Virus record (IMG/VR): IMGVR_UViG_3300044645_002359
Location: 62,001 to 126,000 of that record
Length of the DNA: 64,000 bases
Reading direction: 5' to 3' (one strand)
In this document: one piece after another, positions 12,988 through 32,548 of the stretch
How the letters are laid out: the number at the start of each line of letters is the position of its first letter
Numbering within the stretch: position 1 is the first letter of the stretch
Made by a program: the position numbers and the translations under genes
The notes under the pieces: generated by a model
The model's input: the letters and a program-made list of their open reading frames with translations, nothing else
What the model was told of the DNA's origin: nothing
Databases searched by the model: none

Positions 12988-12993
12988 GTCAAA

Positions 12994-13086: not shown

Positions 13087-13109
13087 CAAAGCAACCCTAG
13101 GAGAACACA

Positions 13110-13229: not shown

Positions 13230-13240
13230 ATTCTATAAAA

Positions 13241-13501: not shown

Positions 13502-13509
13502 CGAATCAA

Positions 13510-15117: not shown

Positions 15118-16058
15118 CAAACGAACTAACCAGCCCCATGTTAGATAGAGCCAAAGGCTGCTTAATCGGACTCGCAATCGGCGATGCCTTGGGTGCGCCA
15201 GTAGAATTTGGCAGTTACGGGTCTTTTGACCCTGTTGTTGGGTTCAGGGATGGAGGACCATTCAACCTTAAAGCGGGCCAATGGACCGATGATACTTCTC
15301 AGGCTTTGTGCTTGGCCGACTCCATTCTGTCCAACAAAGGGTTTAGCCAAGGCGACTTCCTAAACAGGATGATTAATTGGAAGCAGTATGGACACAACAG
15401 CAGTACTGGGAAGTGTTTTGACATTGGAATCGGAACGGCCCATGCTCTCCAGTCTTATAGCAGCACAGGCAAGGTGCCAGTGAATACAAATTCAGGTGGT
15501 AACGGAAACATAATGAGGCTCGCACCGGTTGCTATAGCTTTCTTTAGGGATAACTACAAAACCCAAGAGATTGCCAGCCTGTCGAGTCTAACTACCCATG
15601 GCCACATTTCAGCATTAACTTGCGCGGACTTCCTCAGTGTGATGCTAAGGTCTTATATCGTAAGTAGTGATTGCGAAGGGGACATTACATATAACTGTCA
15701 AACTAACGAGGAAACTTATGAAATTGACCTGTGTAGTGTGACTCTGGAAAGAATAGCGAATGCTGTGACTTCTGAGGAAAGTGAGTGGCATAATGTAAGC
15801 GGATTCTCAACCGACACTTTGTGTGCAGCTTTGTATTGTTTCTTCAACACGGAGTCCTTTGAAGAATGTGTATTGGCTGCGGTAAACCTTGGCGGAGACG
15901 CGGATAGCGTAGGCGCCGTAGCTGGACAAATTGCAGGAGCTTACTACGGGCTTTCCGGTATACCTCAAAGATTCATTGTTGGATTGCAGGACAGCGATAA
16001 GTTTCTGAATTTGGCAGAACAATTATTTAACTTGTATCGAAACAAAGATGAAAACTAA
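15114..16058 (+). CDS. ADP-ribosylglycohydrolase
   Basis: GLAIGDALGAPVE, WTDDT, GNGNIMRLAP, GGDADSVGAVAGQIAGA. Confidence 0.95.
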   Translation: MTNELTSPMLDRAKGCLIGLAIGDALGAPVEFGSYGSFDPVVGFRDGGPFNLKAGQWTDDTSQALCLADSILSNKGFSQGDFLNRMINWKQYGHNSSTGKCFDIGIGTAHALQSYSSTGKVPVNTNSGGNGNIMRLAPVAIAFFRDNYKTQEIASLSSLTTHGHISALTCADFLSVMLRSYIVSSDCEGDITYNCQTNEETYEIDLCSVTLERIANAVTSEESEWHNVSGFSTDTLCAALYCFFNTESFEECVLAAVNLGGDADSVGAVAGQIAGAYYGLSGIPQRFIVGLQDSDKFLNLAEQLFNLYRNKDEN

Positions 16059-18725: not shown

Positions 18726-20213
18726 ATGACTATGGCAATAGAAAGTACAAAGCAAGCCGCTGCGGCAGTCTGCGATAAAAATACCAAATGCGACAATAGC
18801 TGCTCCGTTGGTGAAACCGTTGTCTGTGACTTACGCTCTCGCTCTGCCCCACGCAGAATTGACCTCGATACACTTTACAAGTGCGACCCGAAAGATTACA
18901 TCGGTTACTTCGCTGACGATTCCTCCTACGACAATCTTATTCAAGAAGACTGCGACGTTTACGTTGCCGGTGTCAAAGTTGTCGCTTTTCGTAAGTCCCT
19001 GTTCCCAAAACTGAAGGAAGGTTCCAAGGGCGACCCAAAGACTTGGGAATACTTCCGCTGGGCAGCCCGCGATCTGTATTCTGACCAGCGCGGTCTGGTT
19101 GCCGGTCGGGAACTTACAACCGATCTCGAAATCAGAGTAACTAATGGTATTCTAAACTTCTTCAAAAAAGCCATTGCTGGGCAAGTCACAGAAGTTGAAG
19201 AGGCTCTTAAAATTGTTGCTCTTTCTCCAGATCATGGTAAGCTTACAGTAAGAATCACCGAAGTCAAGAAAGACTATCCGGAAATTGCCAAAGCTCTTGA
19301 GCCCATCGAAGCCGAACTTCGTAAGAAAACGACGAGCGAAGAAAGAAAAGTAGAGCTGAAGAAAGCAAAGGGAGAAGAACTTGCGAAGTGGTTCCCGACC
19401 TGGTTGACACGAACTTGGGCTAAGGCTGAAAACAAAGTAGAGGCAGCTAAGCTAGGGGACGACAGGTATATCAGCAAGCAGCTGCGTTCAAACAAGTGCT
19501 ATTCTAACGTTCTTGGTGCCTTCGATAGAGGGGCAAGAAATCCTTACGGTCGCTTAACCGCTACTACTCTTAAAAACTACGACGGTTTCGTGAGTCATAC
19601 AGACATCTACCAAACCGCTTGTGCCGCTCTGAAAGAAACCCTAAACACACAAGAAAACCCCCGTTGGGATCGTCTTCACGACCGCTTCGGTAACGTGAAA
19701 GATCCACATTATAACCTTTTCGGTACGGTATTTACCGCCCTCACCTTAAACTGGAATTTCCGCTGTGCTATGCACTATGACGGGAACAATTGCGAAGGCG
19801 GTATTGCCGTTCTTACCGCAATGACTCAAGGCGAGTACGAAGGTCATTACCTTGTATTCCCAGAAATCCGGTGCGCCTTTGATCTTCGTGACGGGGACTT
19901 TATTGCAGGTGACAACCAGGGTTTGATTCATGGCAACACCGCTATGATTCCAAAGACTCCTGATGCGGAAAGAGTATCCTTCGTTTTCTATTCTCGCGAG
20001 CGTATGACCTTGCTTGATGACATGGAGTGCGAGGACTGCCGCCGCGATTTCATGAAATACGCAGCTGAGAACTACACTCAGTACGGTAAAGGTCACAAAA
20101 CCTGGAATGGTGTGTGGCAGGGAATGTGGAAGTCTTCGGAATGGATGGACTTCAAAGAACTTAACGGTGCGGAGCGTTGCTCAAACACCAACTACTGGGG
20201 AACTGAAAATTAA
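18726..20213 (+). CDS. TET/JBP-like 2OG-Fe(II) dioxygenase 1
   Basis: FGTVFTALTLNWNFRCAMHYD, G.Y.G.YLVFPE, HGNT, RVSFVFYSRE: HxD...H triad plus 2OG-binding Arg. Confidence 0.85.
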   Translation: MTMAIESTKQAAAAVCDKNTKCDNSCSVGETVVCDLRSRSAPRRIDLDTLYKCDPKDYIGYFADDSSYDNLIQEDCDVYVAGVKVVAFRKSLFPKLKEGSKGDPKTWEYFRWAARDLYSDQRGLVAGRELTTDLEIRVTNGILNFFKKAIAGQVTEVEEALKIVALSPDHGKLTVRITEVKKDYPEIAKALEPIEAELRKKTTSEERKVELKKAKGEELAKWFPTWLTRTWAKAENKVEAAKLGDDRYISKQLRSNKCYSNVLGAFDRGARNPYGRLTATTLKNYDGFVSHTDIYQTACAALKETLNTQENPRWDRLHDRFGNVKDPHYNLFGTVFTALTLNWNFRCAMHYDGNNCEGGIAVLTAMTQGEYEGHYLVFPEIRCAFDLRDGDFIAGDNQGLIHGNTAMIPKTPDAERVSFVFYSRERMTLLDDMECEDCRRDFMKYAAENYTQYGKGHKTWNGVWQGMWKSSEWMDFKELNGAERCSNTNYWGTEN

Positions 20214-20616: not shown

Positions 20617-20928
20617 ATGACGACTGAACCGCAAGCCGAAAGTGAAGAACAATCCTCTCAGGAAACTTTACAAACAACTGTTACTATCAATCTACCCCCA
20701 GATTTTGCAGAGGCTTTCAACTCTCTGGCAGAACGCGAAGGACTATCTCAAGATGCGCTGGTTATGCGCTCTCTTGGCCTTTACTCCGTAGCATCGCAAG
20801 CTGAGAAGGGGGGTTACGCTTTGTCTTTCACCCGGATTGAAGGAACCAACGACCTGACTGCCAAGGAAGCTATTCGCATCGAAGACGAGCCAGAATCTAA
20901 CTTGTTTATTCCAGGCAAGAGGCAATGA
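20617..20928 (+). CDS. Ribbon-helix-helix (CopG-like) protein
   Basis: VTINLP....F..LAEREGLSQ..LV.R.L.LY. Confidence 0.6.
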   Translation: MTTEPQAESEEQSSQETLQTTVTINLPPDFAEAFNSLAEREGLSQDALVMRSLGLYSVASQAEKGGYALSFTRIEGTNDLTAKEAIRIEDEPESNLFIPGKRQ

Positions 20929-22411
20929 TTCGAGTAGCAATAGCGAAAGAATTGCAGTCTAGAGCTGAACCATTGCGGATCGATAGGGGAACCCTTGAAA
21001 ACTGCCCTCGCAGTGAATACATTGGACAATTCCCCAAGACAACAGATTATGACACTGTCATAGACAAAGACTGTGACGTTTACGTCTCAGGTGTGAAAGT
21101 CTTGTCCTTCCGAAAAGCTCTCTTTCCAATTCTTTCCGAGGGTTCTTCCAAACAGAAAGAAACTTGGGACTTTTTCCGAGCAGCTTCAAAAGAAGTTTAT
21201 GGCACCCAAAGAGGTGTCGTTGCGGGCACAGAGTTTACAACTCGTCCCGAGTCACGCTTAACTAAAGGCCAGGTTGCTTTCTTCGCCGGTGCTTCAGTGG
21301 GTTTGATTACAACGCTTCCTCAAGCGCGAGAGGCTCTGGAAAGTTCCAACGAACTCACTAGCAAGACTCTCAAGATCAAGTATATAAAGAAAGACTACCC
21401 AGAACTTGCGGAAAAATGAAGCCCTTGGAGGCAGAAATTCGCACACTGAGCCCCGAAGACCCGAAACTAGAAAGTCTGAGAAACCAGAGAAGGGAACTAC
21501 TTTGGTGTTGGTTTGAACCTTGGTTACTGGAAGTTTGGTTGCCCTCTGAAAACAAAGTAGAAGAAGTCAAAAAAGTTTTAAACACTTACATTAGCTCTCA
21601 GTTAAATTTCAACCATTGCTACAGTAACGTCCTGGGGGCAATTGACCGTGGGGCAAGATTCCCCTATGGTCGTTTGAGCGGAACCACTCAGAGATACTAT
21701 GAGCAGTTCTCTAAATACAGAGACATTTATTACGCGGCCTGCGAAGGTTTCAGGTACAATTTTCCGGAGACCTGGAGCAAAGTTAAAGAAGTAATTTCGA
21801 AGGCTAAAGACCCTAACTACAACTTGTTCGGCACTGCCTTTACGAGCGTAACTCTAAACTTCAATTTTAAGACTGCCTACCACGTTGACAAGAACAACTT
21901 GAAAGGGGGGCTGGCTGTCTTGACTGCGTTCACAAAGGGAGACTATGAGGGCCACTACTTAGTGTTCCCCGAAGTTAAGCTAGCTTTCAACTTGAGAGAC
22001 GGGGACTTTATCGTAGGAGACACTCAAGTCCTACTTCACGGGAACAGCCCCATGACAAAACTCACTGAGGATGCTGAGCGGGTTTCTCTGGTTTTCTACT
22101 CTCGAGAGAATATGACCCGATTGGACGATCTTGATTGTGAAGAATGCCGAAAACAATTCATGAAGTTTTCACTTCAGTCCCTGAAGGAACGGGGCAAAGA
22201 TCACAAAGACTGGAGGGGCGTGTGGCAAGGAATGTGGACTTCTCAGGAGTGGTTAGACTTTCGAAAAGAAAGAAACTTGGAACACTGTTCAAACTCCAAC
22301 TGGCAGCTTTCTTCGCCTTACGAGAATGAAGTTACGAAAGAGATGAAGCTGTTTAAGGACGATCCAGGTGAGGGATGGAAACTCGTACAAGTATTTACAC
22401 AAGGTCGGTAA
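20925..22411 (+). CDS. TET/JBP-like dioxygenase 2, split by a 1-nt frameshift (20925-21419 + 21416-22411)
   Basis: Colinear paralog of 18726; [17 protein letters not shown]; break in A5 run at 21412-21416. Confidence 0.82.
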
Positions 22412-22476
22412 CCGCCCGGAAGCCTTCGGCTTCCTCCCTTGTTTCTGATCCACATAAACGCTATGATTGTTGTATG
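22406..22476 (+). promoter_or_regulatory. Operator-promoter module copy 5
   Basis: CGGTAACCG; TTGTTT-17-TATGAT-6-ATG(22474). Confidence 0.85.
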
Positions 22477-23058
22477 GAAATCTACTTTAGCACAGACGTT
22501 GAAACTGACGGGCCGATTCCCGGCCCCAACAGCATGCTCTCCCTAGGGTCAGCTGCGTTCTCCTCTTCAGGAAAGCTGCTGGCTACCTTCTCGGTGAACC
22601 TGGAGACCCTCCCCGGAGCCGAGCCGGACCCCTCTACCCAAGCGTGGTGGGAGGCCCACCCAGAGGCTTACAGAGCCTCCAGAGAAGGGACCCTGGCCCC
22701 GGACCAAGCCATGCTTGCCTTTTCACAGTGGGTCACTGCTACGGTCAGCTCGTACACTCAAGCGACTGTTAGAAAAGTTTCTCCAGTATTCGTCGGGTTC
22801 CCTGCAGGTTTTGACTTCCTCTTCGTGTATTGGTACCTTATTAAATTCACAGGGCAATCCCCGTTCAGCTTCTCCGCACTTGACGGTAAGACCTATGCCA
22901 TGGCACTTCTTAAGAAAGGCTACCGGCAATCTACAAAAAAGAACTATCCGAAGGAATGGTTCCCCCCGACTGACAAACACACTCACATTGCTGTGGAAGA
23001 TGCCATCGAGCAGGGTCGTATTTTCTGTAAGATGCTGGCCGCAAATGGACAATCTTGA
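22474..23058 (+). CDS. DEDDh 3'-5' exonuclease
   Basis: [19 protein letters not shown]; start refined by promoter geometry. Confidence 0.85.
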
Positions 23059-23454
23059 AATTTACAACCGTAAGCATAAGCTCGTGCTAGAACTGAGAGA
23101 ACTAGGCGAAGAAGAAGCTGAAGATAGCCTGTTGGAGGAGTTGGACGATCTCTGGCATAAGATGAATGAATCAGACCGTCATAAGGCCCAAGCTTTCACC
23201 TATACTTTGCTTTACGGATCCTCCTTACCCCCTACAATCTCCCATTCAGAAAAGATGAGAGAGTACTCTGGAAAAGTTAATGCATCTTTTAAGGCGCTAC
23301 TGGAAGGGGATATCGAAACTAGTGATACTCTCCTAAAGGAAGTCAGATCGCTATGGGAAGAATTAATCTCAGATGATTTCCCAGAAGAATGATTGAGATC
23401 CTAGCTGCATTCATAGCCTTCGGCTTGTTCATGTTTGTATTATCTGTCCTTTAA
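23045..23454 (+). CDS. Hypothetical (23045-23392) and 21-aa hydrophobic peptide (23389-23454)
   Basis: MDNLEIY...; [21 protein letters not shown] with ATGA overlap. Confidence 0.5.
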
Positions 23455-23466
23455 CTCTCAACCTTA

Positions 23467-24231
23467 ATGAAAGACCCACTCTTCCTTCTCCAAGCCGGAG
23501 GCCCGCTACCCACCGAGAAAATTGCCTGCAGCTTTTCGTGTTATCCAGTGAAGTATTGTCCTTTTTCGGATATCAAGAAGTTAGACCCCAAGGAATCCTT
23601 AACTCAACTTGTCCCAGTAGGTTCCGTAGAGTTTGTTAAAGCTTATAGTGAGCACGTGAGCATCGAGCTTCCCAGGGACTTTTCTTATGGCATTTGCGAC
23701 GGTCAACTTGACCAGTTCCTGATGAGATCTATGCGAAAGGGGACTTACGGTGAGGCAACCCTTATTGATTTTGTCAAACCCATTGAGATAAAGTTTTTCA
23801 CAGGAAATGTAAAAGGGCATCTTGAAATGGAGGCACCGGGGCTCATTCCGAATGATACTCCAGTCTGGGTTACCGAAGCCGTACCCTTCGGAGCCGAATT
23901 TCGCTTCTATATTCACGACTTCATTGGTGGTGGTAAAATCCAAGGTTGGTCTCGATACGATGATTCAAACATGCAATGTTCAGAGCCTGACTTTGGCCTG
24001 GTTGAAGCCGTAATGAAAGAGTTGGAGTACGGGGGTGCTCCAGGTGCCTATACAATTGACATTGGGTGGAGGCCTGATTTAGAACGCTATTGCTTAGTTG
24101 AACTCAATGATGCATGGGCATTAGGATTATACGAAAATGCAGACCCTCAATCTAATCCACCTACCCGACAGCAGTACGCCGATATGTTGGTCTCTCGCTG
24201 GAGACAAATTCTTTTCTGCAGTTTAGTATAA
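23467..24231 (+). CDS. ATP-grasp domain protein (DUF4343/R2K-like)
   Basis: PVGSVEFV, FVKP...K.FTG, EFRFYI, AYTIDIG, LVELND. Confidence 0.8.
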   Translation: MKDPLFLLQAGGPLPTEKIACSFSCYPVKYCPFSDIKKLDPKESLTQLVPVGSVEFVKAYSEHVSIELPRDFSYGICDGQLDQFLMRSMRKGTYGEATLIDFVKPIEIKFFTGNVKGHLEMEAPGLIPNDTPVWVTEAVPFGAEFRFYIHDFIGGGKIQGWSRYDDSNMQCSEPDFGLVEAVMKELEYGGAPGAYTIDIGWRPDLERYCLVELNDAWALGLYENADPQSNPPTRQQYADMLVSRWRQILFCSLV

Positions 24232-24890
24232 TGTGTGCTTTATTCGGATGTGACCTAGAAGAAGTCACGCAAAACAACATCCAAACAATACAACGCATTG
24301 CTCTTGAATCACAGGTCAGAGGCAAACATGCTACTGGCATCTCCTACATTGGAAAAAACGGTCTTGAGACAATCACTGAGCCTGTTTGTGCACAGGAATT
24401 TCTGAACATCTATGACATAAATGTTTGTGTCTCAGACGGCTGTCTGACTTTGATCGGTCATTGCCGCTATTCTACCTCTGATATTCGGTATAACCAGCCG
24501 CTAACGAACGGATCTCTTGCTATTGCTCACAATGGTGTCATTGAGCAGTCGCCTCCAGAGACTTGGACAAAGTTTGGGTACCAGCTAGAAACCACCAACG
24601 ATTCAGAGCTTGTGCTTCGAGCTATCGAAAATAAAGAACAACCCCTGAAAAAGTTTCCTGAAGCTTCTATGGCTGTCTTGGAGCTAAGAGAGACTGGCTC
24701 CATGCGCTATTACCGCAATGGTAAGAGACCTTTATGGAAGAGCGAAGTTGAGAACGGTTTTTTCCTCACCTCAACAAAAGACATTGCATTGAGGGCGGGA
24801 TTGAAGAATCCGGTCCGCTGCCTTCCGGGCTTCCTTTACCAAGGGAAGGCAGCAACTAAAATAATTGAAGTTGAAGAGCTGATTGCATGA
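24231..24890 (+). CDS. Class II (Ntn) glutamine amidotransferase
   Basis: N-terminal MC, RG.HATG, GHCRYST, NQP, HNGVI, NDSE. Confidence 0.88.
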   Translation: MCALFGCDLEEVTQNNIQTIQRIALESQVRGKHATGISYIGKNGLETITEPVCAQEFLNIYDINVCVSDGCLTLIGHCRYSTSDIRYNQPLTNGSLAIAHNGVIEQSPPETWTKFGYQLETTNDSELVLRAIENKEQPLKKFPEASMAVLELRETGSMRYYRNGKRPLWKSEVENGFFLTSTKDIALRAGLKNPVRCLPGFLYQGKAATKIIEVEELIA

Positions 24891-25765
24891 CTTACGATCC
24901 TCGAAAGTTTACATATGGTTACGAAATTGAGTGGGGGGATATACCGAGGGATTTCAACATACCTAAGCACTTGGGAACTTGGGAACATGCGGAAACTGAC
25001 ATCCTAAATTTGCACGGGGATTACGCTCTTAGAGCTGTAGATCCTTTGGGAACTGACCCACCCATGGGCGGCGAGATAAACACCAAGCCAACTCATACCT
25101 GGGAAGAGCAAGTTGAGAGAATCATAGAAATTCGCGACATGTTTATCAACGTCGGACACAATCCGACTGCATCTTTGGTGAACCACGGTCACTTACATGT
25201 TTTCGTGCCAGGGCTGAAGGAAGACTTAACAAGCTTACAAAAATTGGTCTCTTACGTTCGAGACAACCAACAACTGACTGTAGAAAAGTGTTACGGTTAC
25301 TATGACGATCCGGACATGAAGGGGGCGGTCAGAGGAGCCAAGACTTACTTGAAGCTCGATGGGGGCAGGTTAATGCCTCAGTACATGATTGATAACATAC
25401 TGAATTTGTCCACGGACTTTAACCACTTGATTAAGTTGCACGCTGCAGGCAAAGATGGTGTGTCAATGGGACGACCGTTCCGGTATGCAATAAACATCTA
25501 CTGTATGAAGCACACAGGTACTGTTGAGTTCCGCTGTTTTAGATCTAGTGTAAATCGCCGAGAGATTGAAGATCAGTTTCGCTTCGTAGAGGCATTCATT
25601 GATGCCGCCCTTAATGATGGTCCACCTGTTGAAACTATTCTTAAAGAGAACAATTATCAGTTCCCCCCTTACGTATGGAACAAGGAACACTGGAATGCTT
25701 GGGCGCTTACCAAGTGGGACAAGTCCAGGGGCAAAAAAGTCAGAAATTACTACGAGGTCCAATGA
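24887..25765 (+). CDS. Putative amidoligase (COOH-NH2 ligase) 1
   Basis: TYGYEIE, GGEINT.P, HLHV, RYAIN, TVEFRCF. Confidence 0.8.
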   Translation: MTYDPRKFTYGYEIEWGDIPRDFNIPKHLGTWEHAETDILNLHGDYALRAVDPLGTDPPMGGEINTKPTHTWEEQVERIIEIRDMFINVGHNPTASLVNHGHLHVFVPGLKEDLTSLQKLVSYVRDNQQLTVEKCYGYYDDPDMKGAVRGAKTYLKLDGGRLMPQYMIDNILNLSTDFNHLIKLHAAGKDGVSMGRPFRYAINIYCMKHTGTVEFRCFRSSVNRREIEDQFRFVEAFIDAALNDGPPVETILKENNYQFPPYVWNKEHWNAWALTKWDKSRGKKVRNYYEVQ

Positions 25766-26712
25766 TTGAGGCTACTTTCGGTGCTGAATATGAACTCGGA
25801 GACGTCAACCGCTTGCTGGAACTGCCTACTGGGGCGAATTGGAACTTTAAAGATCACAGCATTGCCAATTCCACGGGTATCGCAAATGATGAAAAAGCCA
25901 AGTTGTATACCATTGGCGGTGAGATAAACTCCGAGCCAACAGACACAATTGAAGGGCAGTTGAAAATCTGGGAATCTATAAGGGATTCCCAAAGTCAGAT
26001 TCATATTAATCACAGGACCAATTTACACTTACACATTCATGTGCCTGGGTTGAGAGAAGACCTTGGTCGGTTGAAGCGTCTGATGCAATACGTTCAAGAA
26101 CAACAAGACAGGGTCTACCAATTAATAGAACCCTTAGATCCCCCTGAGAAAGAAAATTACAAAACAGCAGCATCTTATAAGGGTGCTATGGATCGTTACA
26201 AGCGCCGTTTAGTTAGTCATCAGAACAGACTCAAACCGGCCCAGGTTAAGTCTTGTATGGAAGCCGTGACTGCTGAAGAGTTTATCAACGGTCACGCACC
26301 GAAAAACAAGAAGGGTGAACCCTTGTGGGCTTTGGCAGTTAGAGGTGGAATCAATATATCTCAACTTCGTGAAACTAATACAATTGAATTCCGGCACTTT
26401 ACACCTACCTTGAGTGCAGAAGAGCTAGAGTGTTGCTTCACTTGGATCCATGAGTTCATGCATGCCGCCTTGGTTACAGGCGAATCTGTCGATGATATCT
26501 ACTCAAGAAAAACCTGGAAGTTCCCACCGTTCGCTGCCTACGACCACGATATCGATGTGGTTTTCCGCTGGACAGACTTGGAAAAGAACAAACGTTCCGA
26601 AGTGAAACAACGACTCGATCGCTTGGCAGAACACTTTGATACTTATTCCCAACCAGCGAGGGATATGTCAGAATTTGTCAGCTCAGAAAGTGGTGGAAAA
26701 CTAGCTCTTTGA
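25762..26712 (+). CDS. Putative amidoligase 2 (paralog)
   Basis: TFGAEYE, GGEINS.P, LHLHIH, RGGIN, TIEFRHF; ATGA overlap. Confidence 0.8.
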   Translation: MIEATFGAEYELGDVNRLLELPTGANWNFKDHSIANSTGIANDEKAKLYTIGGEINSEPTDTIEGQLKIWESIRDSQSQIHINHRTNLHLHIHVPGLREDLGRLKRLMQYVQEQQDRVYQLIEPLDPPEKENYKTAASYKGAMDRYKRRLVSHQNRLKPAQVKSCMEAVTAEEFINGHAPKNKKGEPLWALAVRGGINISQLRETNTIEFRHFTPTLSAEELECCFTWIHEFMHAALVTGESVDDIYSRKTWKFPPFAAYDHDIDVVFRWTDLEKNKRSEVKQRLDRLAEHFDTYSQPARDMSEFVSSESGGKLAL

Positions 26713-27088
26713 TTTGCTGAGCTACTGCGCGATGCATTTCTTCACCCTTGTGTCTGAATGGGTCTTCAACGTTCCAGTTTCGAACCTTCAACGGATCCAC
26801 AGAAAAGTTCTTGTTTATACGGTCTACGTGCAAATGAGACATGCAAATGACTTGGTCCGCCCAGTCCAACAAGTCTTGAGAGTAAGGTTGTGCGATGTGT
26901 TGCTCACCACTGTAGCCCATCTCTGCCAAAACTCGTCTCATTTTGGGAGCCATTCTTGAGCGGTCCACAGCTTGTTTAGAAGTGCCACACGAATCTACTT
27001 TGTACAATCCCGTATTATGAAAACTAAGGATAACATGAGCAGCAGCACTACGATTCACACACCCTGTACAAATAAAGAGTACTTTCAT
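26678..27088 (-). CDS. LMW phosphatase / arsenate-reductase fold protein
   Basis: VLFICTGCVNRS (CX5R), WAD.VICM, EDPF. Confidence 0.88.
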   Translation of the reverse strand: MKVLFICTGCVNRSAAAHVILSFHNTGLYKVDSCGTSKQAVDRSRMAPKMRRVLAEMGYSGEQHIAQPYSQDLLDWADQVICMSHLHVDRINKNFSVDPLKVRNWNVEDPFRHKGEEMHRAVAQQIKELVFHHFLS

Positions 27089-27136
27089 GTTCAGTGCCTA
27101 TAATAAGTATGCATAACCTTACCCTAATGCTTCGTC

Positions 27137-27793
27137 ATGTACTATGTATACAAAATAACTTTCGAAGAGGTACCCCACTTTTACATTGGAATTCGCAAGT
27201 GCCCACCCCTTATAGCACCACAGGAGGATAAATACTTGGGAAGCCCTTGCACACACCGGTCTTATTGGAAAATATACACACCCAAAAAACATATAATGCA
27301 TTGCTACGAGAGTCAAGAAGAGGCTTACCAGGTGGAGCACACCCTTATTATACAGAACTGGAAGAATAAGTATTCCTTGAACAGAGGGGTTGCAGGAGCT
27401 GTACACGAAGAGATATTATCGAATAATGGCAAAAGAGTGGCACAACTCTGGCACAACCGGGTTGAAGAGGACCACAAATTAAGAGAGTGGGCAACGGAAA
27501 ATGCTAGAAAATGTTTGTCTGGGTATCATGAGAGACGTCAGGAGAACGAGGAGGAAAACGAAAGATTTCTAAGTCAATGTTCCGAGAACGGGAAGAGAAC
27601 AGGAGCCTCTAACATAGGCAAATATAACGAAAGAAAAGATGAGCTGGAGTATATAAGAGTAAGAAAAGAGAACGGCAGGAACCGAAAAGGCATGATTTGG
27701 ATTAACAACGGCTCAGAAAATAAAGTGGTCTGGCCGCACATGATGGAGGAGTACTCTACCCGGGGATACAAAAGAGGTAGGAAACATGCTTGA
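27137..27793 (+). mobile_element. Free-standing GIY-YIG-like homing endonuclease
   Basis: YVYKIT...FYIG, D.YLGS, E..LI, SLN; C-terminal WINNG..NK. Confidence 0.7.
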
Positions 27794-28802
27794 AGTTACA
27801 GCTTGCTCATCAGACTACAGATTGTTGGAGAATAGAAGGGAGGGTTTTTTGCAATGGTGGATTGCCTCAACGGCGGCACTTGACGTCGACCCCAGCATGT
27901 GGATGATGAGGTACTTAAACGACCGTTATGAGCATAGCACCGAAGAGAAGCTTTGGTTCGCTTGGCTGTTCCACACATATAATTTACCCACATGTTGGAC
28001 CCTGAAGCAAGAATTTCCAGACGAAGAGCTGGCAAGCGTGGAAAGATTCGACACTTTCGTTGGTGAAAATTACCCTCGAATTCGTCATGAAAAAGACACT
28101 AAGTGGTCGCGTGGACACCTGGCAGCAATGTATGCGAGTTACCATGATTGGGTTGGTGAGAGTACTCAGAGAGACAAGTTCTGGGAACTGTGCCAAGGCT
28201 CCCCCGAAGAGAACTTTTGGGCAATCTGGAATTTGGTTATGGAGAAGTTTTTCAAGTTCGGCCGGTACACCACTTTCTTTTACTTACAAACTCTTAAGCA
28301 AACTTGCAATTTGCCTTTAGACTGTCCCTCTCTATTTTTGAGCGATTACTCTGGCAGTAAAAGCCATAGAAATGGCCTGTGTTTTGCTGCCGGCAAAGAC
28401 GATTGGGTCAACCAAAAATTGACTCCCGCAGAGTACTCTTGGCTAGAGGGCTTCGGTGCTGACTTGCTTGTAGAAGCATATTCGCGGTGGCCCGACTTCA
28501 AAGGCGACATGGACAACTTCGCCCTTGAAACCTGTCTGTGCTCATACAAAAAAGTTTTCCGGACAGCTAACGGTCGTTATGTCAATTATTACAACGATCG
28601 AGTCTCTGAGCAAATTGCCAAGGCAGAAGGAGATGGTTGGTCAGGTATTGACTGGAATGTTTTGCATCAGTGCCGCAGCGAATGCTCCAACGGGCGTCTT
28701 CGTAAAAAAGACAAAATTGACAAAACGAAAATGCACCTTTTCATGGAGCGTGGAACTTTTCATTTTCTGTGGCACGATGGGGAACTGTCTCAGCTTACTT
28801 AG
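27786..28802 (+). CDS. aGPT-pyrophosphorylase clade 2-like amino acid:DNA transferase
   Basis: KFGRYTTFFYLQTL, SHRNGL, LETCLCSYKK, GRY..YY.DR. Confidence 0.78.
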   Translation: MLEVTACSSDYRLLENRREGFLQWWIASTAALDVDPSMWMMRYLNDRYEHSTEEKLWFAWLFHTYNLPTCWTLKQEFPDEELASVERFDTFVGENYPRIRHEKDTKWSRGHLAAMYASYHDWVGESTQRDKFWELCQGSPEENFWAIWNLVMEKFFKFGRYTTFFYLQTLKQTCNLPLDCPSLFLSDYSGSKSHRNGLCFAAGKDDWVNQKLTPAEYSWLEGFGADLLVEAYSRWPDFKGDMDNFALETCLCSYKKVFRTANGRYVNYYNDRVSEQIAKAEGDGWSGIDWNVLHQCRSECSNGRLRKKDKIDKTKMHLFMERGTFHFLWHDGELSQLT

Positions 28803-28854
28803 AGCTGAAGAAGCTATACTGACTTTGTAACCAACTTTCTCTTTGCATTCACGT

Positions 28855-29343
28855 ATGAAACTGACACATTACTTCGGAGTTCCAGGGTGCGGCAAAACCA
28901 CTCTGATGCGCAACAAACTTAGTGTCCTTGAAGCCAATGAGCCGGGGGAAAACGTACAAGAAGGACTCGTCAGATACCACAAGTTTGAAAAACAAAAAAC
29001 TATCGTGCTAGGGGTGTACGACGATAGCACTTTCGCTGGTTTAGACAAACTTTCAAAAGGGGTTGGTCCAAAGTTCCGTCAATGGCTGTTAGACAACGCA
29101 GAAAAGTATAAGGGTTGGGAAGTTTTCTCAGAAGGAGAAAGATTCTCTAACAACCCCACTCTAGACGCAATGTTTGCTACAGGGAACATGACACTTGTGC
29201 TTGTCCAGGTTAGCGACGAAGAACTTGAGAAAAGAAGAGCAGCTAGGAACAATACCCAAAATGAGACTTGGATGAAAGGTATGCAAACTCGGATGAATAA
29301 CCTTGCCCAAAAGTATACTCACACCGTGCTCAACAACGACTGA
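28855..29343 (+). CDS. P-loop nucleotide kinase of the type linked to aGPT-PPase2
   Basis: GVPGCGKTT, GVY...FAG.D.LS, EGERF.N, R..R...Q...W.KG..T. Confidence 0.75.
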   Translation: MKLTHYFGVPGCGKTTLMRNKLSVLEANEPGENVQEGLVRYHKFEKQKTIVLGVYDDSTFAGLDKLSKGVGPKFRQWLLDNAEKYKGWEVFSEGERFSNNPTLDAMFATGNMTLVLVQVSDEELEKRRAARNNTQNETWMKGMQTRMNNLAQKYTHTVLNND

Positions 29344-29350
29344 AACTTCA

Positions 29351-29866
29351 ATGTCAAACTCTCAAGAAATTATTGAAAAACTGAAAGACCAGATTGCTTT
29401 TCTGACCGCCGAACTTAACCGGGTTGAGCAAAAGTCCAATTCTTTATGGGGCCAATTACAAGACGCTTTCCTTCAAGAAGGGAATGATTTAGAAAATGCA
29501 AACTTCTGGGCAGACCGAATTTCACAGATTTTTTCTACATGGGTCCATAGTCAGAGAACCAACCTCACTCAGAGAATTGTATCAACGGGCGTAATGCCTC
29601 CCTACACTGACTGCCTTAACGATTTGGTCGTAAGTATTTCCCCTCCGGGGTCTACACCACCGAGTTTGCCCCCTGAATTTGCAGAATTAGCTAACACTCC
29701 TGTAGTTGGACCTACCCTCGCAACTCCAAGTTTTGATAGACCCGCCTACGAAGGGCTCTCAGCAGATGCTCAGATTGGCCCACCGAAGCAACGGAAAATT
29801 GGTGTCCCGAAACCCATTCCTGGGGCAGTCCCCTTGCCGTTACCTCCCTTGACTGGAGCAGATTGA
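29351..29866 (+). CDS. Hypothetical protein, Pro-rich C-terminus
   Basis: ORF track; start refined to MSNSQ. Confidence 0.5.
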   Translation: MSNSQEIIEKLKDQIAFLTAELNRVEQKSNSLWGQLQDAFLQEGNDLENANFWADRISQIFSTWVHSQRTNLTQRIVSTGVMPPYTDCLNDLVVSISPPGSTPPSLPPEFAELANTPVVGPTLATPSFDRPAYEGLSADAQIGPPKQRKIGVPKPIPGAVPLPLPPLTGAD

Positions 29867-29927: not shown

Positions 29928-31271
29928 ATGTCAAAAGAGAGTCAACCACAAAAAGACCCAATATTGCAATCGATCCGAATTGCCCTAGACGCCGTTAAAT
30001 CAGCAGGCAGCACAGGAAAGCCGGGTATCCCGCCTACAACAGGGACAAGGCTGATGGCTCTTCTATCCGTTGCAATGTTAAACACTTTGGCGTCCTTTGA
30101 CAGAAGTGTAAAGCCCTACTTCAAATCTAGCAAAGCACTTAATGGTGCAAATCAAAGTGCGGCCATCCTGGGAGCAGCCCAAAGGATTTTGTTGAGGGGA
30201 ATTCCCGGTGAATCGCGACTTATCTATTCTGAGTTTGCCAAGGCATTTCGGGGGTTGAAGCTCAAGTCGGTGAAAGACTTAATAAGTGTAAAATTCGGGG
30301 TTGAAATTGCCGACAAGGTGATAGCCTCAAGGTCGCAAGATGGGTCTGAAAATCAAACTCCGCTTAACAGCAACGGAAACCCTCAGGATTATTTATGGAA
30401 ACCCGCGACATCTGGCCCCACTGCTGGGATCGCACTTGGGGTTAATTGGGGCTCGGTTAAGCCGTGGGTCATTGGGAGTACCAGTGCGTACCAGACAGAT
30501 GGCTTGAATGCTAGGCCAGGCGCGAATTTAGAAGCATATGCCCAGCAATTAGCAGAAGTGAGGTTGTTCGGGGGCTTAAATGATACATCCCTCACCAAGA
30601 CTCAACGCACAGAGAACCAGACGCATATCGCTAAGTTCTGGGCCTATGACCGAGCTGATACGTTCCGCCCCTACGGACAACTCCTAGACATTGCCTCTGA
30701 GATAGCAGCAAACCAGAAAACAAGCACTCAGACCAATGCCAAATTGTTCGCAAGCTTGAGCATGGCAATGGCTGACTCCGTGATTTGTGCGTGGAACGAG
30801 AAGTACAAAGTCCTGCAACCACGACCCTATGACGTTATTACCGGGGCGTTTTCTGATAAGGATGGGACACCGATCACTGTTCGCGACTCCGAGTGGCAAT
30901 CTCTCTTGTCATCTATCAATGGTGTTCAATCGCCACCGTTTCCAGATTTCTTATCGGGGCACTCAGCCATGGGTGGAGCCTTCGCCAGCGTAATGACTCA
31001 CTTTTTCGGAGACAAGCTAGTCTTCTCGACCCAATCCCAGGATTTACCAGGTTTTACAAGAACTTTCGATGGTAGTATACCTGCAGGTTCTCTTGGTGAC
31101 ATTGGCCTTATCGTGAACTCACCAATATACCGCCCAAATAGCTTCTACGAAGCTGGAATTGAGGATGCTGTTAGCCGTGTGTATGGAGGAGTCCATGTAC
31201 GGGAAGCCTGCCTTGACTCCTTTAATCTGGGGGTCAAAGTCGGTATTGCGGCTGTCTTGTGGGGTCGGTAA
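29928..31271 (+). CDS. Vanadium-dependent haloperoxidase-like (PAP2 superfamily)
   Basis: KYKVLQPRP (KX6RP), PPFPDFLSGHS, SRVYGGVH. Confidence 0.85.
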   Translation: MSKESQPQKDPILQSIRIALDAVKSAGSTGKPGIPPTTGTRLMALLSVAMLNTLASFDRSVKPYFKSSKALNGANQSAAILGAAQRILLRGIPGESRLIYSEFAKAFRGLKLKSVKDLISVKFGVEIADKVIASRSQDGSENQTPLNSNGNPQDYLWKPATSGPTAGIALGVNWGSVKPWVIGSTSAYQTDGLNARPGANLEAYAQQLAEVRLFGGLNDTSLTKTQRTENQTHIAKFWAYDRADTFRPYGQLLDIASEIAANQKTSTQTNAKLFASLSMAMADSVICAWNEKYKVLQPRPYDVITGAFSDKDGTPITVRDSEWQSLLSSINGVQSPPFPDFLSGHSAMGGAFASVMTHFFGDKLVFSTQSQDLPGFTRTFDGSIPAGSLGDIGLIVNSPIYRPNSFYEAGIEDAVSRVYGGVHVREACLDSFNLGVKVGIAAVLWGR

Positions 31272-31350: not shown

Positions 31351-31983
31351 GTGGAAACCTGCACCAAATATCCCCGCACCTTGCACCTTCCGTGGTCCCT
31401 GAGCGTAACATCCGATGATAAGGTTGTGCCTTCGGTCGCTCATTTTAGGGGCCGCCAAGTGATTGTGACCGAAAAGATGGACGGAGAGAATACGACCATG
31501 TACCGCAACCATATTCATGCCAGAAGCCTGGATAGCAAAGGTGGTGAGGACAGGGCTTGGGTCAAGCAGTTTTGGGGGTCAATCCGAAATGAAATCCCTG
31601 AAGGGTGGCGAATCTGTGGTGAAAACCTATGGGCTTGCCATAGCGTCCAATACACCGATCTGAAATCATATTTCTATGGGTTTAGCATATGGGATAGCCA
31701 CAACATTGCCCTACCCTGGAGTGACACTTTAGAGTATTTTTCTATGCTCGGAATAAAACCTGTACCCGTTCTCTGGGGCGGTAAATGGAATGAACTCGCA
31801 ATCCGCAGTCTCTGCGATACCCTAAACCCAGATCAAACCGAAGGCTACGTCGTTCGCCTTGCTGACTCCTTTCATTACGATGATTTTGGTATGTCAGTGG
31901 CTAAGTTTGTTCGTGCCAACCATGTTCGTGCCAACAAGCACTGGCGGTCACAGCAATTTGTTGCCAATGGCCTAGCTGTCTGA
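31351..31983 (+). CDS. RNA ligase family protein
   Basis: KYPRT.HLPWS, TEKMDGEN, EGYVVR, AKFVR. Confidence 0.88.
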   Translation: METCTKYPRTLHLPWSLSVTSDDKVVPSVAHFRGRQVIVTEKMDGENTTMYRNHIHARSLDSKGGEDRAWVKQFWGSIRNEIPEGWRICGENLWACHSVQYTDLKSYFYGFSIWDSHNIALPWSDTLEYFSMLGIKPVPVLWGGKWNELAIRSLCDTLNPDQTEGYVVRLADSFHYDDFGMSVAKFVRANHVRANKHWRSQQFVANGLAV

Positions 31984-32023: not shown

Positions 32024-32548
32024 ATGGCAACCACATACAAACCACCCGCACCACTCCCGCCGAAATGGCAGGGCTACAGCGTTTTTCTCGCCGGATCCAT
32101 CGAAATGGGTGCTGCTCCTAATTGGCAAGCCGAGGTAGAACGCAACCTTGCCGGTCTTGACATCGATATCTTCAATCCTCGCCGCGACAACTGGGACCCA
32201 ACATGGATGCAAAGCGCAGACAATCCCCAGTTCCGTGAACAAGTCGAGTGGGAACTTGATACCCTAGATAGGGCCAACTTGGCCGTGATGTATTTAGTAC
32301 CGGGAACCCTGAGCCCGATATCGTTATTGGAACTTGGGATTTATGCTGCCAAGGAGAGAAATAAGCTGATTGTATGCTGCCCTGAAGGCTTCCACCGAAA
32401 GGGTAACGTTGACATTGTTTGCGAGCGATACGGCGTCAAGCAAGTTGCTTCCCTAGATGAGCTTACGGACGCTATTCGGACTCGGTATTCTGAGTGGCAA
32501 ATGATATGGGAAGAATGTGGGTTTGGCAACCGGGTGATCCATCTCTAA
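32024..32548 (+). CDS. Nucleoside 2-deoxyribosyltransferase-like protein
   Basis: VFLAGSIEMG..W, FNPRR, QVEWE, SPISLLELG. Confidence 0.85.
   Translation: MATTYKPPAPLPPKWQGYSVFLAGSIEMGAAPNWQAEVERNLAGLDIDIFNPRRDNWDPTWMQSADNPQFREQVEWELDTLDRANLAVMYLVPGTLSPISLLELGIYAAKERNKLIVCCPEGFHRKGNVDIVCERYGVKQVASLDELTDAIRTRYSEWQMIWEECGFGNRVIHL

What the first reader, a model, noticed from the sequence alone, without database searches (positions are those of the whole stretch)
23467..26712. Translationally coupled ATP-grasp / GATase / amidoligase x2 cassette
Stop-start overlaps (TAATG at 24231, ATGA at 24887 and 25762) imply co-translation. Three ATP-dependent C-N ligases plus an ammonia donor is more than one amidation needs. 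This suggests a multi-step side chain, made either as a free donor or on DNA. Alternatively the cassette modifies proteins or a metabolite independently of DNA.
Basis: partly seen in the sequence, partly recalled or inferred. Interest (0 to 1): 0.65.

Follow-up and report, generated by a model that had tools for sequence, protein, structure and literature searches.

The report
Amide-forming tailoring genes for phage thymine hypermodification
The four genes are real, but only the glutamine amidotransferase and the two glutamine-synthetase-like ligases (plus an overlooked phosphatase) belong to a phage pathway that decorates thymine in DNA; the ATP-grasp gene is an unrelated neighbour.

Summary
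Four contiguous + strand ORFs (23467-26712) join by TAATG, ATGA and ATGA overlaps. They encode an R2K ATP-grasp, a stand-alone class-II glutamine amidotransferase (GAT), and two 31%-identical paralogs (AmL1, AmL2) with a glutamine-synthetase/YbdK/PafA-type carboxylate-amine ligase fold.

The window is a jumbo-phage fragment. The cassette sits between two TET/JBP dioxygenases and an amino-acid:DNA transferase (ADDT) plus a 5-hmU DNA kinase.

In 157 related loci on several phage backbones:
- GAT-AmL is nearly always linked to TET, ADDT and kinase.
- AmL1 is always followed by a GNAT.
- AmL2 is followed by an LMW phosphatase in 76 of 77 loci.

It is absent from 155 of 157 amidoligase loci. Of 15 ATP-grasp-anchored relatives, 14 lack the amidoligase cassette: 8 carry a glycosyl cassette in its place and 3 have an empty slot.

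Short start/stop overlaps occur at about a fifth of gene junctions here, so they are weak evidence.

Best reading: GAT plus AmL1/AmL2 amidate or extend the carboxylate of an amino acid installed on 5-hmU in DNA. The literature has noted this association but not characterised it. The product is unknown.

The parts
18726..20213 (+). TET/JBP-family 2OG/Fe dioxygenase 1 (495 aa). Presumed thymine-to-5-hmU oxidase acting on DNA.
   Evidence: Pfam Tet_JBP E 8e-14, above cut-off. One of only two copies in the 201-kb record. No C5-methyltransferase, ThyA-like hydroxymethylase or ParB was found in the record.
21416..22411 (+). TET/JBP-family dioxygenase 2 (331 aa).
   Evidence: Pfam Tet_JBP E 8e-19. 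Present in only some relatives.
23467..24231 (+). R2K-clade ATP-grasp (254 aa). Adjacent and overlapping by 1 nt, but judged NOT part of the hypermodification module.
   Evidence: Pfam R2K_3 79 bits and R2K_2 67 bits. Invariant K104, K109, E144, R146, D198 and E212-x-N214. 14 of 15 ATP-grasp-anchored relatives lack GAT, amidoligase and ADDT; the gene is absent from 155 of 157 amidoligase loci.
24231..24890 (+). Stand-alone class-II (Ntn) glutamine amidotransferase, 219 aa. Proposed ammonia donor for the amidoligase(s).
   Evidence: GATase_6 35.5 bits against a cut-off of 27. Starts Met-Cys. In 31 homologs C2, R30-G31, H77-x-R79-Y-S-T, N101-G102 and N123-D124-x-E126 are invariant. Lies immediately upstream of AmL1 in 71 of 72 loci.
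24887..25765 (+). AmL1: glutamine-synthetase-fold carboxylate-amine ligase (Amidoligase_2-like), 292 aa.
   Evidence: 592 homologs, none with a Pfam annotation. AF2 pLDDT 92. The listed Foldseek hits are all GS, gamma-GCS or YbdK. Invariant G11, E13, E15, E63, N65, H102, H104, R199, E214 and R216. Falls in the AmL1 clade at 100% support.
25762..26712 (+). AmL2: paralogous glutamine-synthetase-fold ligase, 316 aa.
   Evidence: 31% identical to AmL1. AF2 pLDDT 95.7. The top 19 structural matches are all GS-fold ligases: YbdK Z 10.5, PafA 9.2, Dop 9.1, GS 9.1, GshA 9.0; the next match drops to Z 4.3. Relatives pass the PF12224 cut-off.
26678..27088 (-). LMW phosphatase (LMWPc family), 136 aa. Convergent with AmL2, overlapping its 3' end by 35 nt. 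Conserved partner of AmL2.
   Evidence: Pfam LMWPc 53.4 bits against a cut-off of 23.2. C7-x5-R13-S P-loop and a D-P motif are present. An LMWPc homolog lies within 6 kb of AmL2 in 76 of 77 loci and immediately downstream in 66 of 74.
27786..28802 (+). Amino acid:DNA transferase (ADDT / AADT / aGPT-Pplase).
   Evidence: Pfam ADDT 66.6 bits against a cut-off of 26.2. Co-occurs with AmL1 in 69 of 80 loci and with AmL2 in 64 of 77.
28843..29343 (+). P-loop nucleotide kinase 3, the 5-hmU DNA kinase type.
   Evidence: Pfam Ploopntkinase3 44 bits against a cut-off of 27. Syntenic with ADDT in relatives.

Best explanation
The region is the tailoring part of a post-replicative thymidine hypermodification pathway of a jumbo phage.

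Proposed order of steps:
1. The TET/JBP dioxygenases oxidise thymine in DNA to 5-hydroxymethyluracil.
2. The P-loop kinase phosphorylates it.
3. The ADDT replaces the phosphate with a free amino acid, bound through its amino group. This leaves a pendant carboxylate on the base.
4. The glutamine-synthetase-fold ligases AmL1 and AmL2 activate carboxylate(s) with ATP, as acyl-phosphate. Ammonia from the stand-alone class-II GATase converts them to carboxamides. Alternatively, one of the two ligases uses another amine.

Two ligases would fit either an acidic amino acid with two carboxylates or two successive amide bonds.

The LMW phosphatase works with AmL2. Its step is unknown; it may remove a phosphate from an intermediate, from a phosphorylated co-substrate, or from left-over 5-phosphomethyl-U.

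The R2K ATP-grasp upstream is a separate backbone gene, probably a protein-modifying ligase, and is not needed for this chemistry.

Shown here: gene identities, folds, conserved residues, synteny and assortment. Inferred: every chemical step, the substrate polarity and the product.
For: Context in the window: two Tet_JBP, ADDT, Ploopntkinase3 and LMWPc all score above Pfam cut-offs.

Source of 5-hmU: no C5-methyltransferase, ThyA-like enzyme or ParB was found in the 201-kb record. That points to thymine rather than 5mC as the dioxygenase substrate. This follows the published reasoning for such clusters (PMC8989533; PMC13229309).

Conserved synteny on independent backbones:
- TET-GAT-AmL1-GNAT-ADDT-kinase in T4-like contigs.
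- TET-GAT-AmL2-LMWPc-ADDT-kinase in T4-like and other contigs.
- ADDT-DAO-AmL2-LMWPc-HMUDK in a third group.

GAT and ligase genes overlap in distant relatives.

The GAT keeps the class-II glutaminase residues but has no synthase domain of its own.

AmL1 and AmL2 have a GS/YbdK/gamma-GCS/PafA fold with invariant acidic, His and Arg residues on the core strands.

Precedents: AADT installs free amino acids on 5-hmU (PMC8989533). An ATP-dependent amide ligase acts on a DNA-borne carboxylate (CmoY, PMC12783734).

ATP-grasp independence.
Against: - No chemistry was measured. The amino acid installed by this ADDT is unknown; its best cultured relatives are only 28% identical.
- The type without GAT pairs AmL2 with a DAO-type flavoenzyme. 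In PaMx11 that enzyme class unmasks a DNA-borne amine. AmL2 might therefore acylate an amine on DNA rather than amidate a carboxylate.
- Ten AmL2 loci (typed; L001 lacks an LMWPc hit) show no recognisable GAT or DAO; most also lack a recognisable ADDT or kinase within 10 kb, though two (L171, L175) carry one.
- The GAT-AmL1 complex prediction gave no answer.
- Residue-level alignment to solved ligases was not significant.
- The ATP-grasp also sits directly upstream of GAT in the sister contigs L113 and L114. An accessory role when the cassette is present is therefore not excluded.
Confidence: 0.55

Rival explanations
1. Free-donor synthesis. GAT and the amidoligases act in the nucleotide or amino-acid pool. 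They build an unusual amine donor, such as an amino-acid amide, a dipeptide or a gamma-glutamyl amine. The ADDT then transfers this donor to phosphorylated 5-hmU, so no ligase touches DNA.
For: The synteny fits pre-transfer and post-transfer roles equally well. Glutamine-synthetase-fold ligases such as YbdK, GshA and GS, the best structural matches, act on small molecules. Known AADTs use free amino acids as donors.
Against: Characterised thymidine pathways tailor the appended amino acid on the DNA polymer (PMC8989533). PafA and Dop, which act on macromolecules, match as well as the small-molecule enzymes. CmoY shows that amide ligation on DNA is feasible.
Confidence: 0.2
2. Reverse polarity. 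The DNA carries the amine, either a diamine or an amine unmasked from the appended amino acid. AmL1 or AmL2 ligates a free carboxylic acid onto it, much as the GNAT acetylates 5-aminomethyl-U in PaMx11. GAT would serve another step.
For: The ADDT-DAO-AmL2-LMWPc-HMUDK clusters have no GAT. In them AmL2 occupies the position of the PaMx11 acetyltransferase, after a DAO-type flavoenzyme. PafA-type ligases attach an activated carboxylate to an amine on a macromolecule.
Against: The window has no DAO. GAT lies immediately upstream of the ligase, with overlap, in 71 of 72 AmL1 loci. That is the expected arrangement for a glutaminase/synthetase pair whose nucleophile is ammonia.
Confidence: 0.12
3. 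All four genes, ATP-grasp included, form one co-translated pathway that builds a multi-step side chain.
For: There is a 1-nt overlap between the ATP-grasp and GAT. The same adjacency is kept in L009, L010, L011, L113 and L114. Linked ATP-grasp and COOH-NH2 ligases are known in peptide-ligase operons (PMC4431377). PA11 carries the same domain set.
Against: The ATP-grasp is kept at 51-79% identity in relatives with no hypermodification genes or with a glycosyl cassette instead. It is absent from 155 of 157 amidoligase loci. In L108 and a JGI contig it lies kilobases away, next to a transaldolase. Overlaps are common genome-wide.
Confidence: 0.08
4. A protein- or metabolite-modifying cassette that is independent of DNA, like the amidoligase/GATase peptide-tagging systems predicted for phages such as PA11.
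For: PA11 and TC6 carry a GATase, a COOH-NH2 ligase, an amidoligase and an ATP-grasp without TET, ADDT or kinase. Some AmL2-LMWPc pairs lack a recognisable ADDT nearby.
Against: The linkage to ADDT, kinase and TET is near-obligate across independent phage backbones. The PA11 ligases are not detectably related to AmL1 or AmL2. Even the orphan pairs sit among DNA-metabolism genes.
Confidence: 0.05

Closest known systems
Post-replicative thymidine hypermodification pathways: 5-HMUDK plus amino acid:DNA transferase plus tailoring enzymes (phages M6, ViI, PaMx11, SP10; Lee et al. 2018 and 2021, PMC5889632, PMC8989533)
   Same: Both have a P-loop 5-hmU DNA kinase and an ADDT/AADT next to each other, with tailoring genes clustered around them. 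The 2021 paper explicitly notes uncharacterised amidoligase and glutamine amidotransferase genes, and TET_JBP genes, in metavirome clusters.
   Different: The characterised tailoring enzymes are PLP decarboxylases, radical-SAM isomerases, FAD lyases and GNATs. No GATase, amidoligase or LMW phosphatase step has been characterised. Here 5-hmU is presumably made in DNA by TET/JBP; no dUMP hydroxymethylase was found.
Phage T-dioxygenase (5mYOX) clusters, clade C1 (PNAS 2026, PMC13229309)
   Same: TET/JBP enzymes without a neighbouring C5-methyltransferase, linked to GATases, P-loop kinases and AADTs.
   Different: That subclass is defined by a ParB partner. No ParB_N was found in the 201-kb record. 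The paper's main text has no occurrence of 'amidoligase', 'ligase' or 'phosphatase'. The window has two TET/JBP paralogs.
CmoX/CmoY of Synechococcus phage S-B43 (PMC12783734)
   Same: An ATP-dependent amide ligase acts on a carboxylate carried by a DNA base. This is the same logic as proposed here.
   Different: CmoY is an asparagine-synthetase-like, AMP-forming ligase. It acts on 5-carboxymethylcytosine with glycine as the amine. It has no GS-fold ligase, GATase, kinase or ADDT.
Amidoligase_2 (PF12224) and GS-fold carboxylate-amine ligases: YbdK/GCS2, GshA, glutamine synthetase, PafA/Dop
   Same: Same fold (Z 8-10.5). A GxExE strand, a further Glu, an HxH strand and an ExR strand are invariant in both paralog families.
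   Different: AmL1 and AmL2 themselves score below the Pfam cut-off or not at all. They are about 300 aa with no extra domains. No sequence-level match to any solved structure was found.
GATase / COOH-NH2 ligase / amidoligase / RimK-like ATP-grasp cassette of Pseudomonas phages PA11 and TC6
   Same: Same set of enzyme superfamilies, encoded side by side in a cultured phage.
   Different: Only the GATase N-domain is detectably related (HMM E 2e-18). The ligase profiles find nothing in PA11. PA11 shows no annotated TET, ADDT or 5-hmU DNA kinase. The ATP-grasp is RimK-like, not R2K.
R2K-clade ATP-grasp enzymes (CDC123 relatives; Burroughs et al. 2015, PMC4431377)
   Same: Strong R2K_3 and R2K_2 matches and a conserved ExN motif. 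Phage members are predicted to be protein-modifying peptide ligases used in phage-host conflict.
   Different: No substrate is known. Here it is a lineage backbone gene next to a swappable DNA-modification slot.

Membership tests
Amidoligase_2 (PF12224) / GS-fold carboxylate-amine ligase | Match to the family HMM above the curated cut-off | tested here: inconclusive
   AmL1 scores 18.1 bits against a cut-off of 22. AmL2 gives no hit. However, 24 of 38 members of the two paralog families hit PF12224 at E<=0.01 (best 1.4e-6), and no other family was hit by more than one member. The L132 AmL2 ortholog scores 25.2 bits, above the cut-off.
Amidoligase_2 (PF12224) / GS-fold carboxylate-amine ligase | Glutamine-synthetase-like catalytic fold | tested here: met
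   AF2 models have pLDDT 92 and 95.7. The listed Foldseek hits are all GS, GshF or YbdK. In VIA-align the top 19 chains are all GS-fold ligases at Z 5.7-10.5, and the next match drops to Z 4.3.
Amidoligase_2 (PF12224) / GS-fold carboxylate-amine ligase | Metal- and ATP-binding Glu, His and Arg residues equivalent to those of active ligases | tested here: inconclusive
   Invariant across both families (AmL1 numbering): G11, E13, E15, E63, N65, H102, H104, R199, E214, R216. Most lie on predicted core strands. hhalign to E. coli YbdK and GshA was not significant.
Amidoligase_2 (PF12224) / GS-fold carboxylate-amine ligase | ATP-dependent amide bond formation | not testable with these tools
   Needs an enzyme assay.
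Class-II (Ntn) glutamine amidotransferase | N-terminal catalytic Cys and family HMM match | tested here: met
   The protein starts Met-Cys. GATase_6 scores 35.5 bits against a cut-off of 27. C2 is invariant in 31 aligned homologs. All 91 extracted GAT homologs start Met-Cys, but the extraction script required an ATG-TGY start, so that count is not independent.
Class-II (Ntn) glutamine amidotransferase | Glutamine-binding and oxyanion residues (Arg, Asn-Gly, Asp) | tested here: met
   R79 (in an H-x-R-Y-S-T motif), N101-G102 and N123-D124-x-E126 are invariant. Equating them with the PurF/GlmS catalytic residues rests on general knowledge of the family.
Class-II (Ntn) glutamine amidotransferase | Physical coupling to a synthase partner that accepts ammonia | tested here: inconclusive
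   Gene adjacency with overlap is conserved: 71 of 72 loci for AmL1. The complex prediction gave no answer.
R2K ATP-grasp | Family HMM match and conserved Lys, Arg and ExN residues | tested here: met
   R2K_3 scores 79.3 bits and R2K_2 67.3 bits, both above cut-offs. K104, K109, E144, R146, D198 and E212-x-N214 are invariant in 11 homologs.
   Of 15 ATP-grasp-anchored loci, 1 has GAT, amidoligase and ADDT; 8 have a TAGT glycosyl cassette; 3 have an empty slot. The ATP-grasp is found in 0 of 80 AmL1 loci and 2 of 77 AmL2 loci.
Thymidine hypermodification pathway (5-HMUDK + AADT type) | A 5-hmU DNA kinase and an amino acid:DNA transferase encoded together | tested here: met
   ADDT scores 66.6 bits against 26.2. 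Ploopntkinase3 scores 44 bits against 27. The two genes are 40 nt apart.
Thymidine hypermodification pathway (5-HMUDK + AADT type) | A source of 5-hmU and no 5mC route | tested here: met
   Two Tet_JBP genes are present. No PF00145 or PF00303 match was found in the 201-kb record, which is estimated about 71% complete, so the absence is provisional.
Thymidine hypermodification pathway (5-HMUDK + AADT type) | A modified thymidine is actually present in virion DNA | not testable with these tools
   Needs nucleoside LC-MS of phage or recombinant DNA.
LMW phosphatase (LMWPc) | HMM match and a C-x5-R P-loop with a downstream Asp | tested here: met
   LMWPc scores 53.4 bits against 23.2. C7-x5-R13-S and a D-P motif near residue 118 are present.

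The most novel reading that the evidence does not exclude
GAT, AmL1, AmL2 and the LMW phosphatase act on DNA itself. They convert an ADDT-installed (possibly acidic) amino acid on thymine into a mono- or di-amide, or a short peptide-like side chain. That would be the first glutamine-dependent amidation of a DNA base adduct.

It would also define AmL2-LMWPc as an obligate ligase/phosphatase pair, and AmL1-GNAT as an alternative pair. Phages appear to swap these pairs as cassettes to diversify thymidine hypermodifications.
Probability: 0.35. Interest if true: 0.75.

Novelty: new variant of a known kind. Interest (0 to 1): 0.55.

Why it matters
Hypermodified thymidines protect phage DNA from host nucleases. 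Their enzymes are also useful tools for DNA functionalisation.

The kinase/AADT core is understood. Published metavirome surveys flag GATase and amidoligase genes as recurrent but unexplained companions.

This analysis makes several points:
- The companions form two distinct, mutually exclusive sub-modules: AmL1-GNAT and AmL2-LMW phosphatase.
- Both sub-modules occur at the same locus of T4-like phages.
- The window's lineage combines AmL1 with AmL2-phosphatase.
- The neighbouring ATP-grasp should be left out of reconstitution experiments.

Together these give a concrete, small gene set for discovering a new amide-type DNA modification.

Tried and rejected
- Near-identity DNA search of the region against cultured phages: no match.
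- Profile of AmL1 against PDB sequences: no hit at E<=10.
- hhalign of the amidoligase alignment against E. coli YbdK and GshA: not significant. The only aligned stretch was the N-terminal GxExE strand of YbdK, at E 0.17.
- Complex prediction for GAT plus AmL1: 'no answer', score 0.00. This is not evidence either way.
- Promoter and terminator scan of 22300-29500: counts within about two standard deviations of shuffled sequence, so not informative about operon limits.
- NCBIfam: nothing for the ATP-grasp or the amidoligases.
- PHROGs: nothing for the amidoligases.
- PA11 cassette as a homolog: rejected. Only the GATase N-domain is related.
- ADDT specificity from cultured relatives: the best hits are 28%-identical ViI-like phages, too distant to infer the amino acid.
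- The large representative-protein search was not used, because family scans, word searches and folds settled the identities.
- Model coordinates are not exposed to scripts, so spatial clustering of the invariant residues could not be computed.
- The careful tree search did not finish; the quick IQ-TREE result was used.
- An analogy between AmL2-LMWPc and the McsB kinase/YwlE phosphatase pair was considered. It was set aside because phosphagen-kinase folds match only at Z about 4, against 8-10.5 for ligases.

Full report
**1. Observation.** The window is almost entirely + strand coding. It is part of a 201,260-bp IMG/VR virus record estimated about 71% complete, so it is a jumbo-phage fragment.

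The four ORFs are as described:

| ORF | Coordinates | Length |
|---|---|---|
| 1 | 23467-24231 | 254 aa |
| 2 | 24231-24890 | 219 aa |
| 3 | 24887-25765 | 292 aa |
| 4 | 25762-26712 | 316 aa |

The junctions are TAATG, ATGA and ATGA.

The overlaps are real but ordinary for this genome. A crude + strand gene call finds 1- or 4-nt start/stop overlaps at 21 of 112 junctions. Other runs of two or three occur at 20617-22411, 40230-41673 and 41726-43237. The overlaps fit tight packing and possible translational coupling. They do not mark a functional unit.

**2. Identities.**

*ORF1* is an R2K-clade ATP-grasp. R2K_3 gives E 5e-22 and R2K_2 gives 2e-18. K104, K109, E144, R146, D198 and E212-x-N214 are invariant in 11 homologs.

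*ORF2* is a stand-alone class-II glutamine amidotransferase.
- GATase_6 scores above the cut-off.
- It starts Met-Cys.
- C2, R30-G31, H77-x-R79-Y-S-T, N101-G102 and N123-D124-x-E126 are invariant in 31 homologs.

*ORF3 (AmL1) and ORF4 (AmL2)* are paralogs, 31% identical at E 4e-29. Pfam alone leaves them open: AmL1 scores 18.1 bits on Amidoligase_2 against a cut-off of 22, and AmL2 scores nothing. Three lines close the question.
- 24 of 38 members of the two families hit PF12224, and no other family was hit by more than one member. A 40%-identical AmL2 ortholog passes the cut-off.
- The AlphaFold models are confident, at pLDDT 92 and 95.7.
- The AmL1 model matches only glutamine synthetases, gamma-glutamylcysteine ligases and YbdK among the listed Foldseek hits. 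For the AmL2 model, the 19 best of 48,161 chains are all GS-fold carboxylate-amine ligases: YbdK Z 10.5, PafA 9.2, Dop 9.1, GS 9.1, GshA 9.0. The next match drops to Z 4.3.

Across both families the invariant residues (AmL1 numbering) are a GxExE strand (G11, E13, E15), E63/N65, H102/H104, R199 and E214-x-R216. Most lie on predicted core strands. General knowledge of the fold places metal and nucleotide ligands there.

Residue-level alignment to solved enzymes was not significant.

**3. Surroundings.**

Upstream:
- a thymidylate-kinase-like gene
- two TET/JBP dioxygenases (18726-20213 and 21416-22411)
- an exonuclease

Downstream:
- an LMW phosphatase on the minus strand (26678-27088; LMWPc 53 bits; C-x5-R P-loop)
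- a homing endonuclease (27137-27793)
- an amino acid:DNA transferase (ADDT, 27786-28802)
- a Ploopntkinase3 kinase (28843-29343)

The 201-kb record shows no C5-cytosine methyltransferase, no ThyA-like hydroxymethylase and no ParB. It has just two TET/JBP genes and two amidoligases. This is the signature of a post-replicative thymidine hypermodification cluster fed by a T-dioxygenase, as discussed in PMC8989533 and PMC13229309.

**4. Relatives.** AmL1 has 592 homologs in metagenomes, with no Pfam annotation among the 120 listed. AmL2 has 34. I fetched 186 loci and mapped the window's cluster proteins onto them by tblastn.

| Anchor | Loci | Linked genes within 6 kb | Immediate neighbours | ATP-grasp |
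|---|---|---|---|---|
| AmL1 | 80 | GAT 78, ADDT 69, TET 68 | GAT upstream 71 of 72; GNAT downstream 76 of 76 | 0 |
| AmL2 | 77 | LMWPc 76, GAT 58, ADDT 64, kinase 53, TET 50 | LMWPc downstream 66 of 74 | 2 |

The shortfalls in ADDT and TET counts are largely contig ends.

Three module types emerge:
- Type A: TET-GAT-AmL1-GNAT-ADDT-kinase.
- Type B: TET-GAT-(GT1)-AmL2-LMWPc-ADDT-kinase.
- Type C: ADDT-DAO-AmL2-LMWPc-HMUDK-HMUDK_hel-Nmad5, with no GAT or TET.

Types A and B both occur between UvsW/gp46 and gp45/gp44 of T4-like phages. They are therefore alternative cassettes at one locus.

A quick maximum-likelihood tree splits AmL1 and AmL2 into two clades with 100% support. It groups the window's AmL2 with the sister lineage's type-B genes (L108, L110, L112, L113). 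The window's AmL1 falls with the type-A genes. The window's arrangement, GAT-AmL1-AmL2-LMWPc, is thus a rare hybrid, also seen in L009/L023, L010 and L011/L027. An AmL1 without its GNAT sits inside a type-B module. It is not a local duplication.

**5. The ATP-grasp.** In the window's own lineage the backbone runs TMPK, DUF6915, SprT, (TET), Exo, ATP-grasp, then a slot, then o29303, RNA ligase and NDT. The ATP-grasp is kept whatever the slot holds:
- L012-L014 (78% identity) have no TET, and o29303 follows the ATP-grasp directly.
- L015-L021 and L024 carry a TET-associated glycosyltransferase, a HAD-like gene, a nucleotidyltransferase and an APH-like kinase in the slot.
- Only the window's closest kin carry the GAT/amidoligase/phosphatase/ADDT/kinase cassette.

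In L108 and a JGI contig the ATP-grasp lies kilobases away, beside a transaldolase. S-CRM01 and several jumbo phages have it with none of the other genes.

Published work predicts that phage R2K enzymes modify proteins (PMC4431377 and PMC7824862).

**6. Mechanism.**

*Shown:* identities, folds, conserved residues, synteny and assortment.

*Inferred, by analogy with characterised pathways:*
1. TET/JBP converts T to 5-hmU.
2. The kinase makes 5-phosphomethyl-U.
3. The ADDT installs an amino acid through its amino group.
4. The stand-alone glutaminase has no synthase domain. Its gene overlaps the ligase gene in distant lineages. The most economical reading is a two-subunit, glutamine-dependent amidotransferase. 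The GS-fold ligase activates a carboxylate and ammonia attacks it.

The DNA-borne carboxylate of the appended amino acid is the obvious substrate. CmoY is a precedent for amide ligation on a DNA base. Two ligases would suit two carboxylates or two successive bonds.

The role of the LMW phosphatase is open. Its near-obligate pairing with AmL2 suggests that a phosphorylated intermediate or co-substrate is specific to AmL2 chemistry.

Alternatives are free-donor synthesis and reverse polarity, meaning acylation of a DNA-borne amine. Type C suggests the latter, because a DAO-type flavoenzyme precedes AmL2 there. Neither is excluded.

**7. Comparison and novelty.** The kinase/AADT core and the TET link are known. 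The co-association of amidoligases and GATases has been noted in print but left uncharacterised.

In the papers I could search, I found no mention of:
- the split into AmL1-GNAT and AmL2-LMWPc sub-modules
- the phosphatase partner
- the hybrid arrangement seen here

The PA11/TC6 cassette has the same enzyme superfamilies, but only its GATase N-domain is detectably related.

Verdict: a new variant of a known kind.

**8. Limits.**
- There is no chemical evidence.
- Absences in the virus record are provisional, because it is about 71% complete.
- Co-occurrence rests on tblastn at E 1e-4 within at most 10-kb flanks, so divergent partners can be missed. An example is the orphan AmL2-LMWPc pairs that sit among PolIII-alpha, dCMP deaminase and RecA genes.
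- The complex prediction gave no answer.
- The tree is from the quick search.

Noticed in passing
window 26678-27088 (- strand): An LMW phosphatase (LMWPc) gene is one of the few minus-strand genes here. It is convergent with AmL2 and overlaps its 3' end by 35 nt. A homolog follows AmL2 in 76 of 77 related loci, on the same strand in most lineages and inverted in the window's lineage.
   Followed up: yes
window 27137-27793: A homing-endonuclease-like ORF (phrog_314) lies between the phosphatase and the ADDT. It is absent at this position in the close relative L009/L023, where the ADDT follows the phosphatase directly. It is probably a mobile insertion.
   Followed up: partly
window 29928-31271: A 447-aa PAP2 / vanadium-haloperoxidase-like ORF. 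Relative L009 goes straight from the o29303 homolog to the RNA ligase, so this gene looks specific to the window's genome.
   Followed up: partly
L015-L021 and L024, about 10760-13650; L012-L014: The slot between the ATP-grasp and the o29303 homolog is swappable. Sister phages hold a TET-associated glycosyltransferase, a HAD-like gene, a nucleotidyltransferase and an APH-like kinase there. Others have nothing there, and no TET either.
   Followed up: yes
L117-L173 (e.g. L132 8842-9987); L108 12664-13689: Many type-B clusters carry a GT1-family glycosyltransferase, either between GAT and AmL2 or between ADDT and kinase. This hints at combined amide and sugar decoration.
   Followed up: partly
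L003 (phage Simon, PQ683277) 7980-10867: A phage record from raw sewage carries AmL2-like, LMWPc and HMUDK_hel-kinase genes in a row. It could serve as an experimental handle for the AmL2-phosphatase pair.
   Followed up: partly
L001 (Vibrio phage 2.275.O, MG592671) 7866-8978: A distant AmL homolog (25-26% identity) lies next to a 7-deazaguanine cluster: a QueF-like gene, a queuosine biosynthesis (QueC-like) gene, an Ntn aminohydrolase and GTP cyclohydrolase I. GS-fold ligases may therefore also tailor other DNA base modifications.
   Followed up: no
L036 5466 and 7125: One T4-like contig has two AmL1 copies flanking GAT. They are sister sequences in the tree, so this is an independent case of two amidoligases in one cluster.
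   Followed up: no
L153-L157, L166, L185: AmL2-LMWPc pairs occur with no recognisable GAT, ADDT or kinase within 10 kb. In L153 the pair sits among PolIII-alpha, dCMP deaminase, RecA and several unannotated genes.
   Followed up: partly
window 23046-23392 and 23390-23455: Two small, unlisted + strand ORFs fill the apparent gap before the ATP-grasp. One is an acidic protein of about 115 aa. The other is a 21-aa hydrophobic peptide joined to it by an ATGA overlap.
   Followed up: no
window 15009-16058, 31351-31983, 32024-32548, 36146-37225: Other unusual auxiliary genes lie nearby: an ADP-ribosylglycohydrolase, an RNA ligase, a nucleoside 2-deoxyribosyltransferase-like gene and a histone-deacetylase-family gene. 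R2K ATP-grasp genes are linked to ADP-ribosylglycohydrolases in some bacteria, according to PMC4431377.
   Followed up: no
window 24150-24231 (ATP-grasp C-terminus): The last 25 or so residues of the ATP-grasp are almost invariant from 51% to 83% overall identity. This suggests a conserved interaction motif.
   Followed up: no
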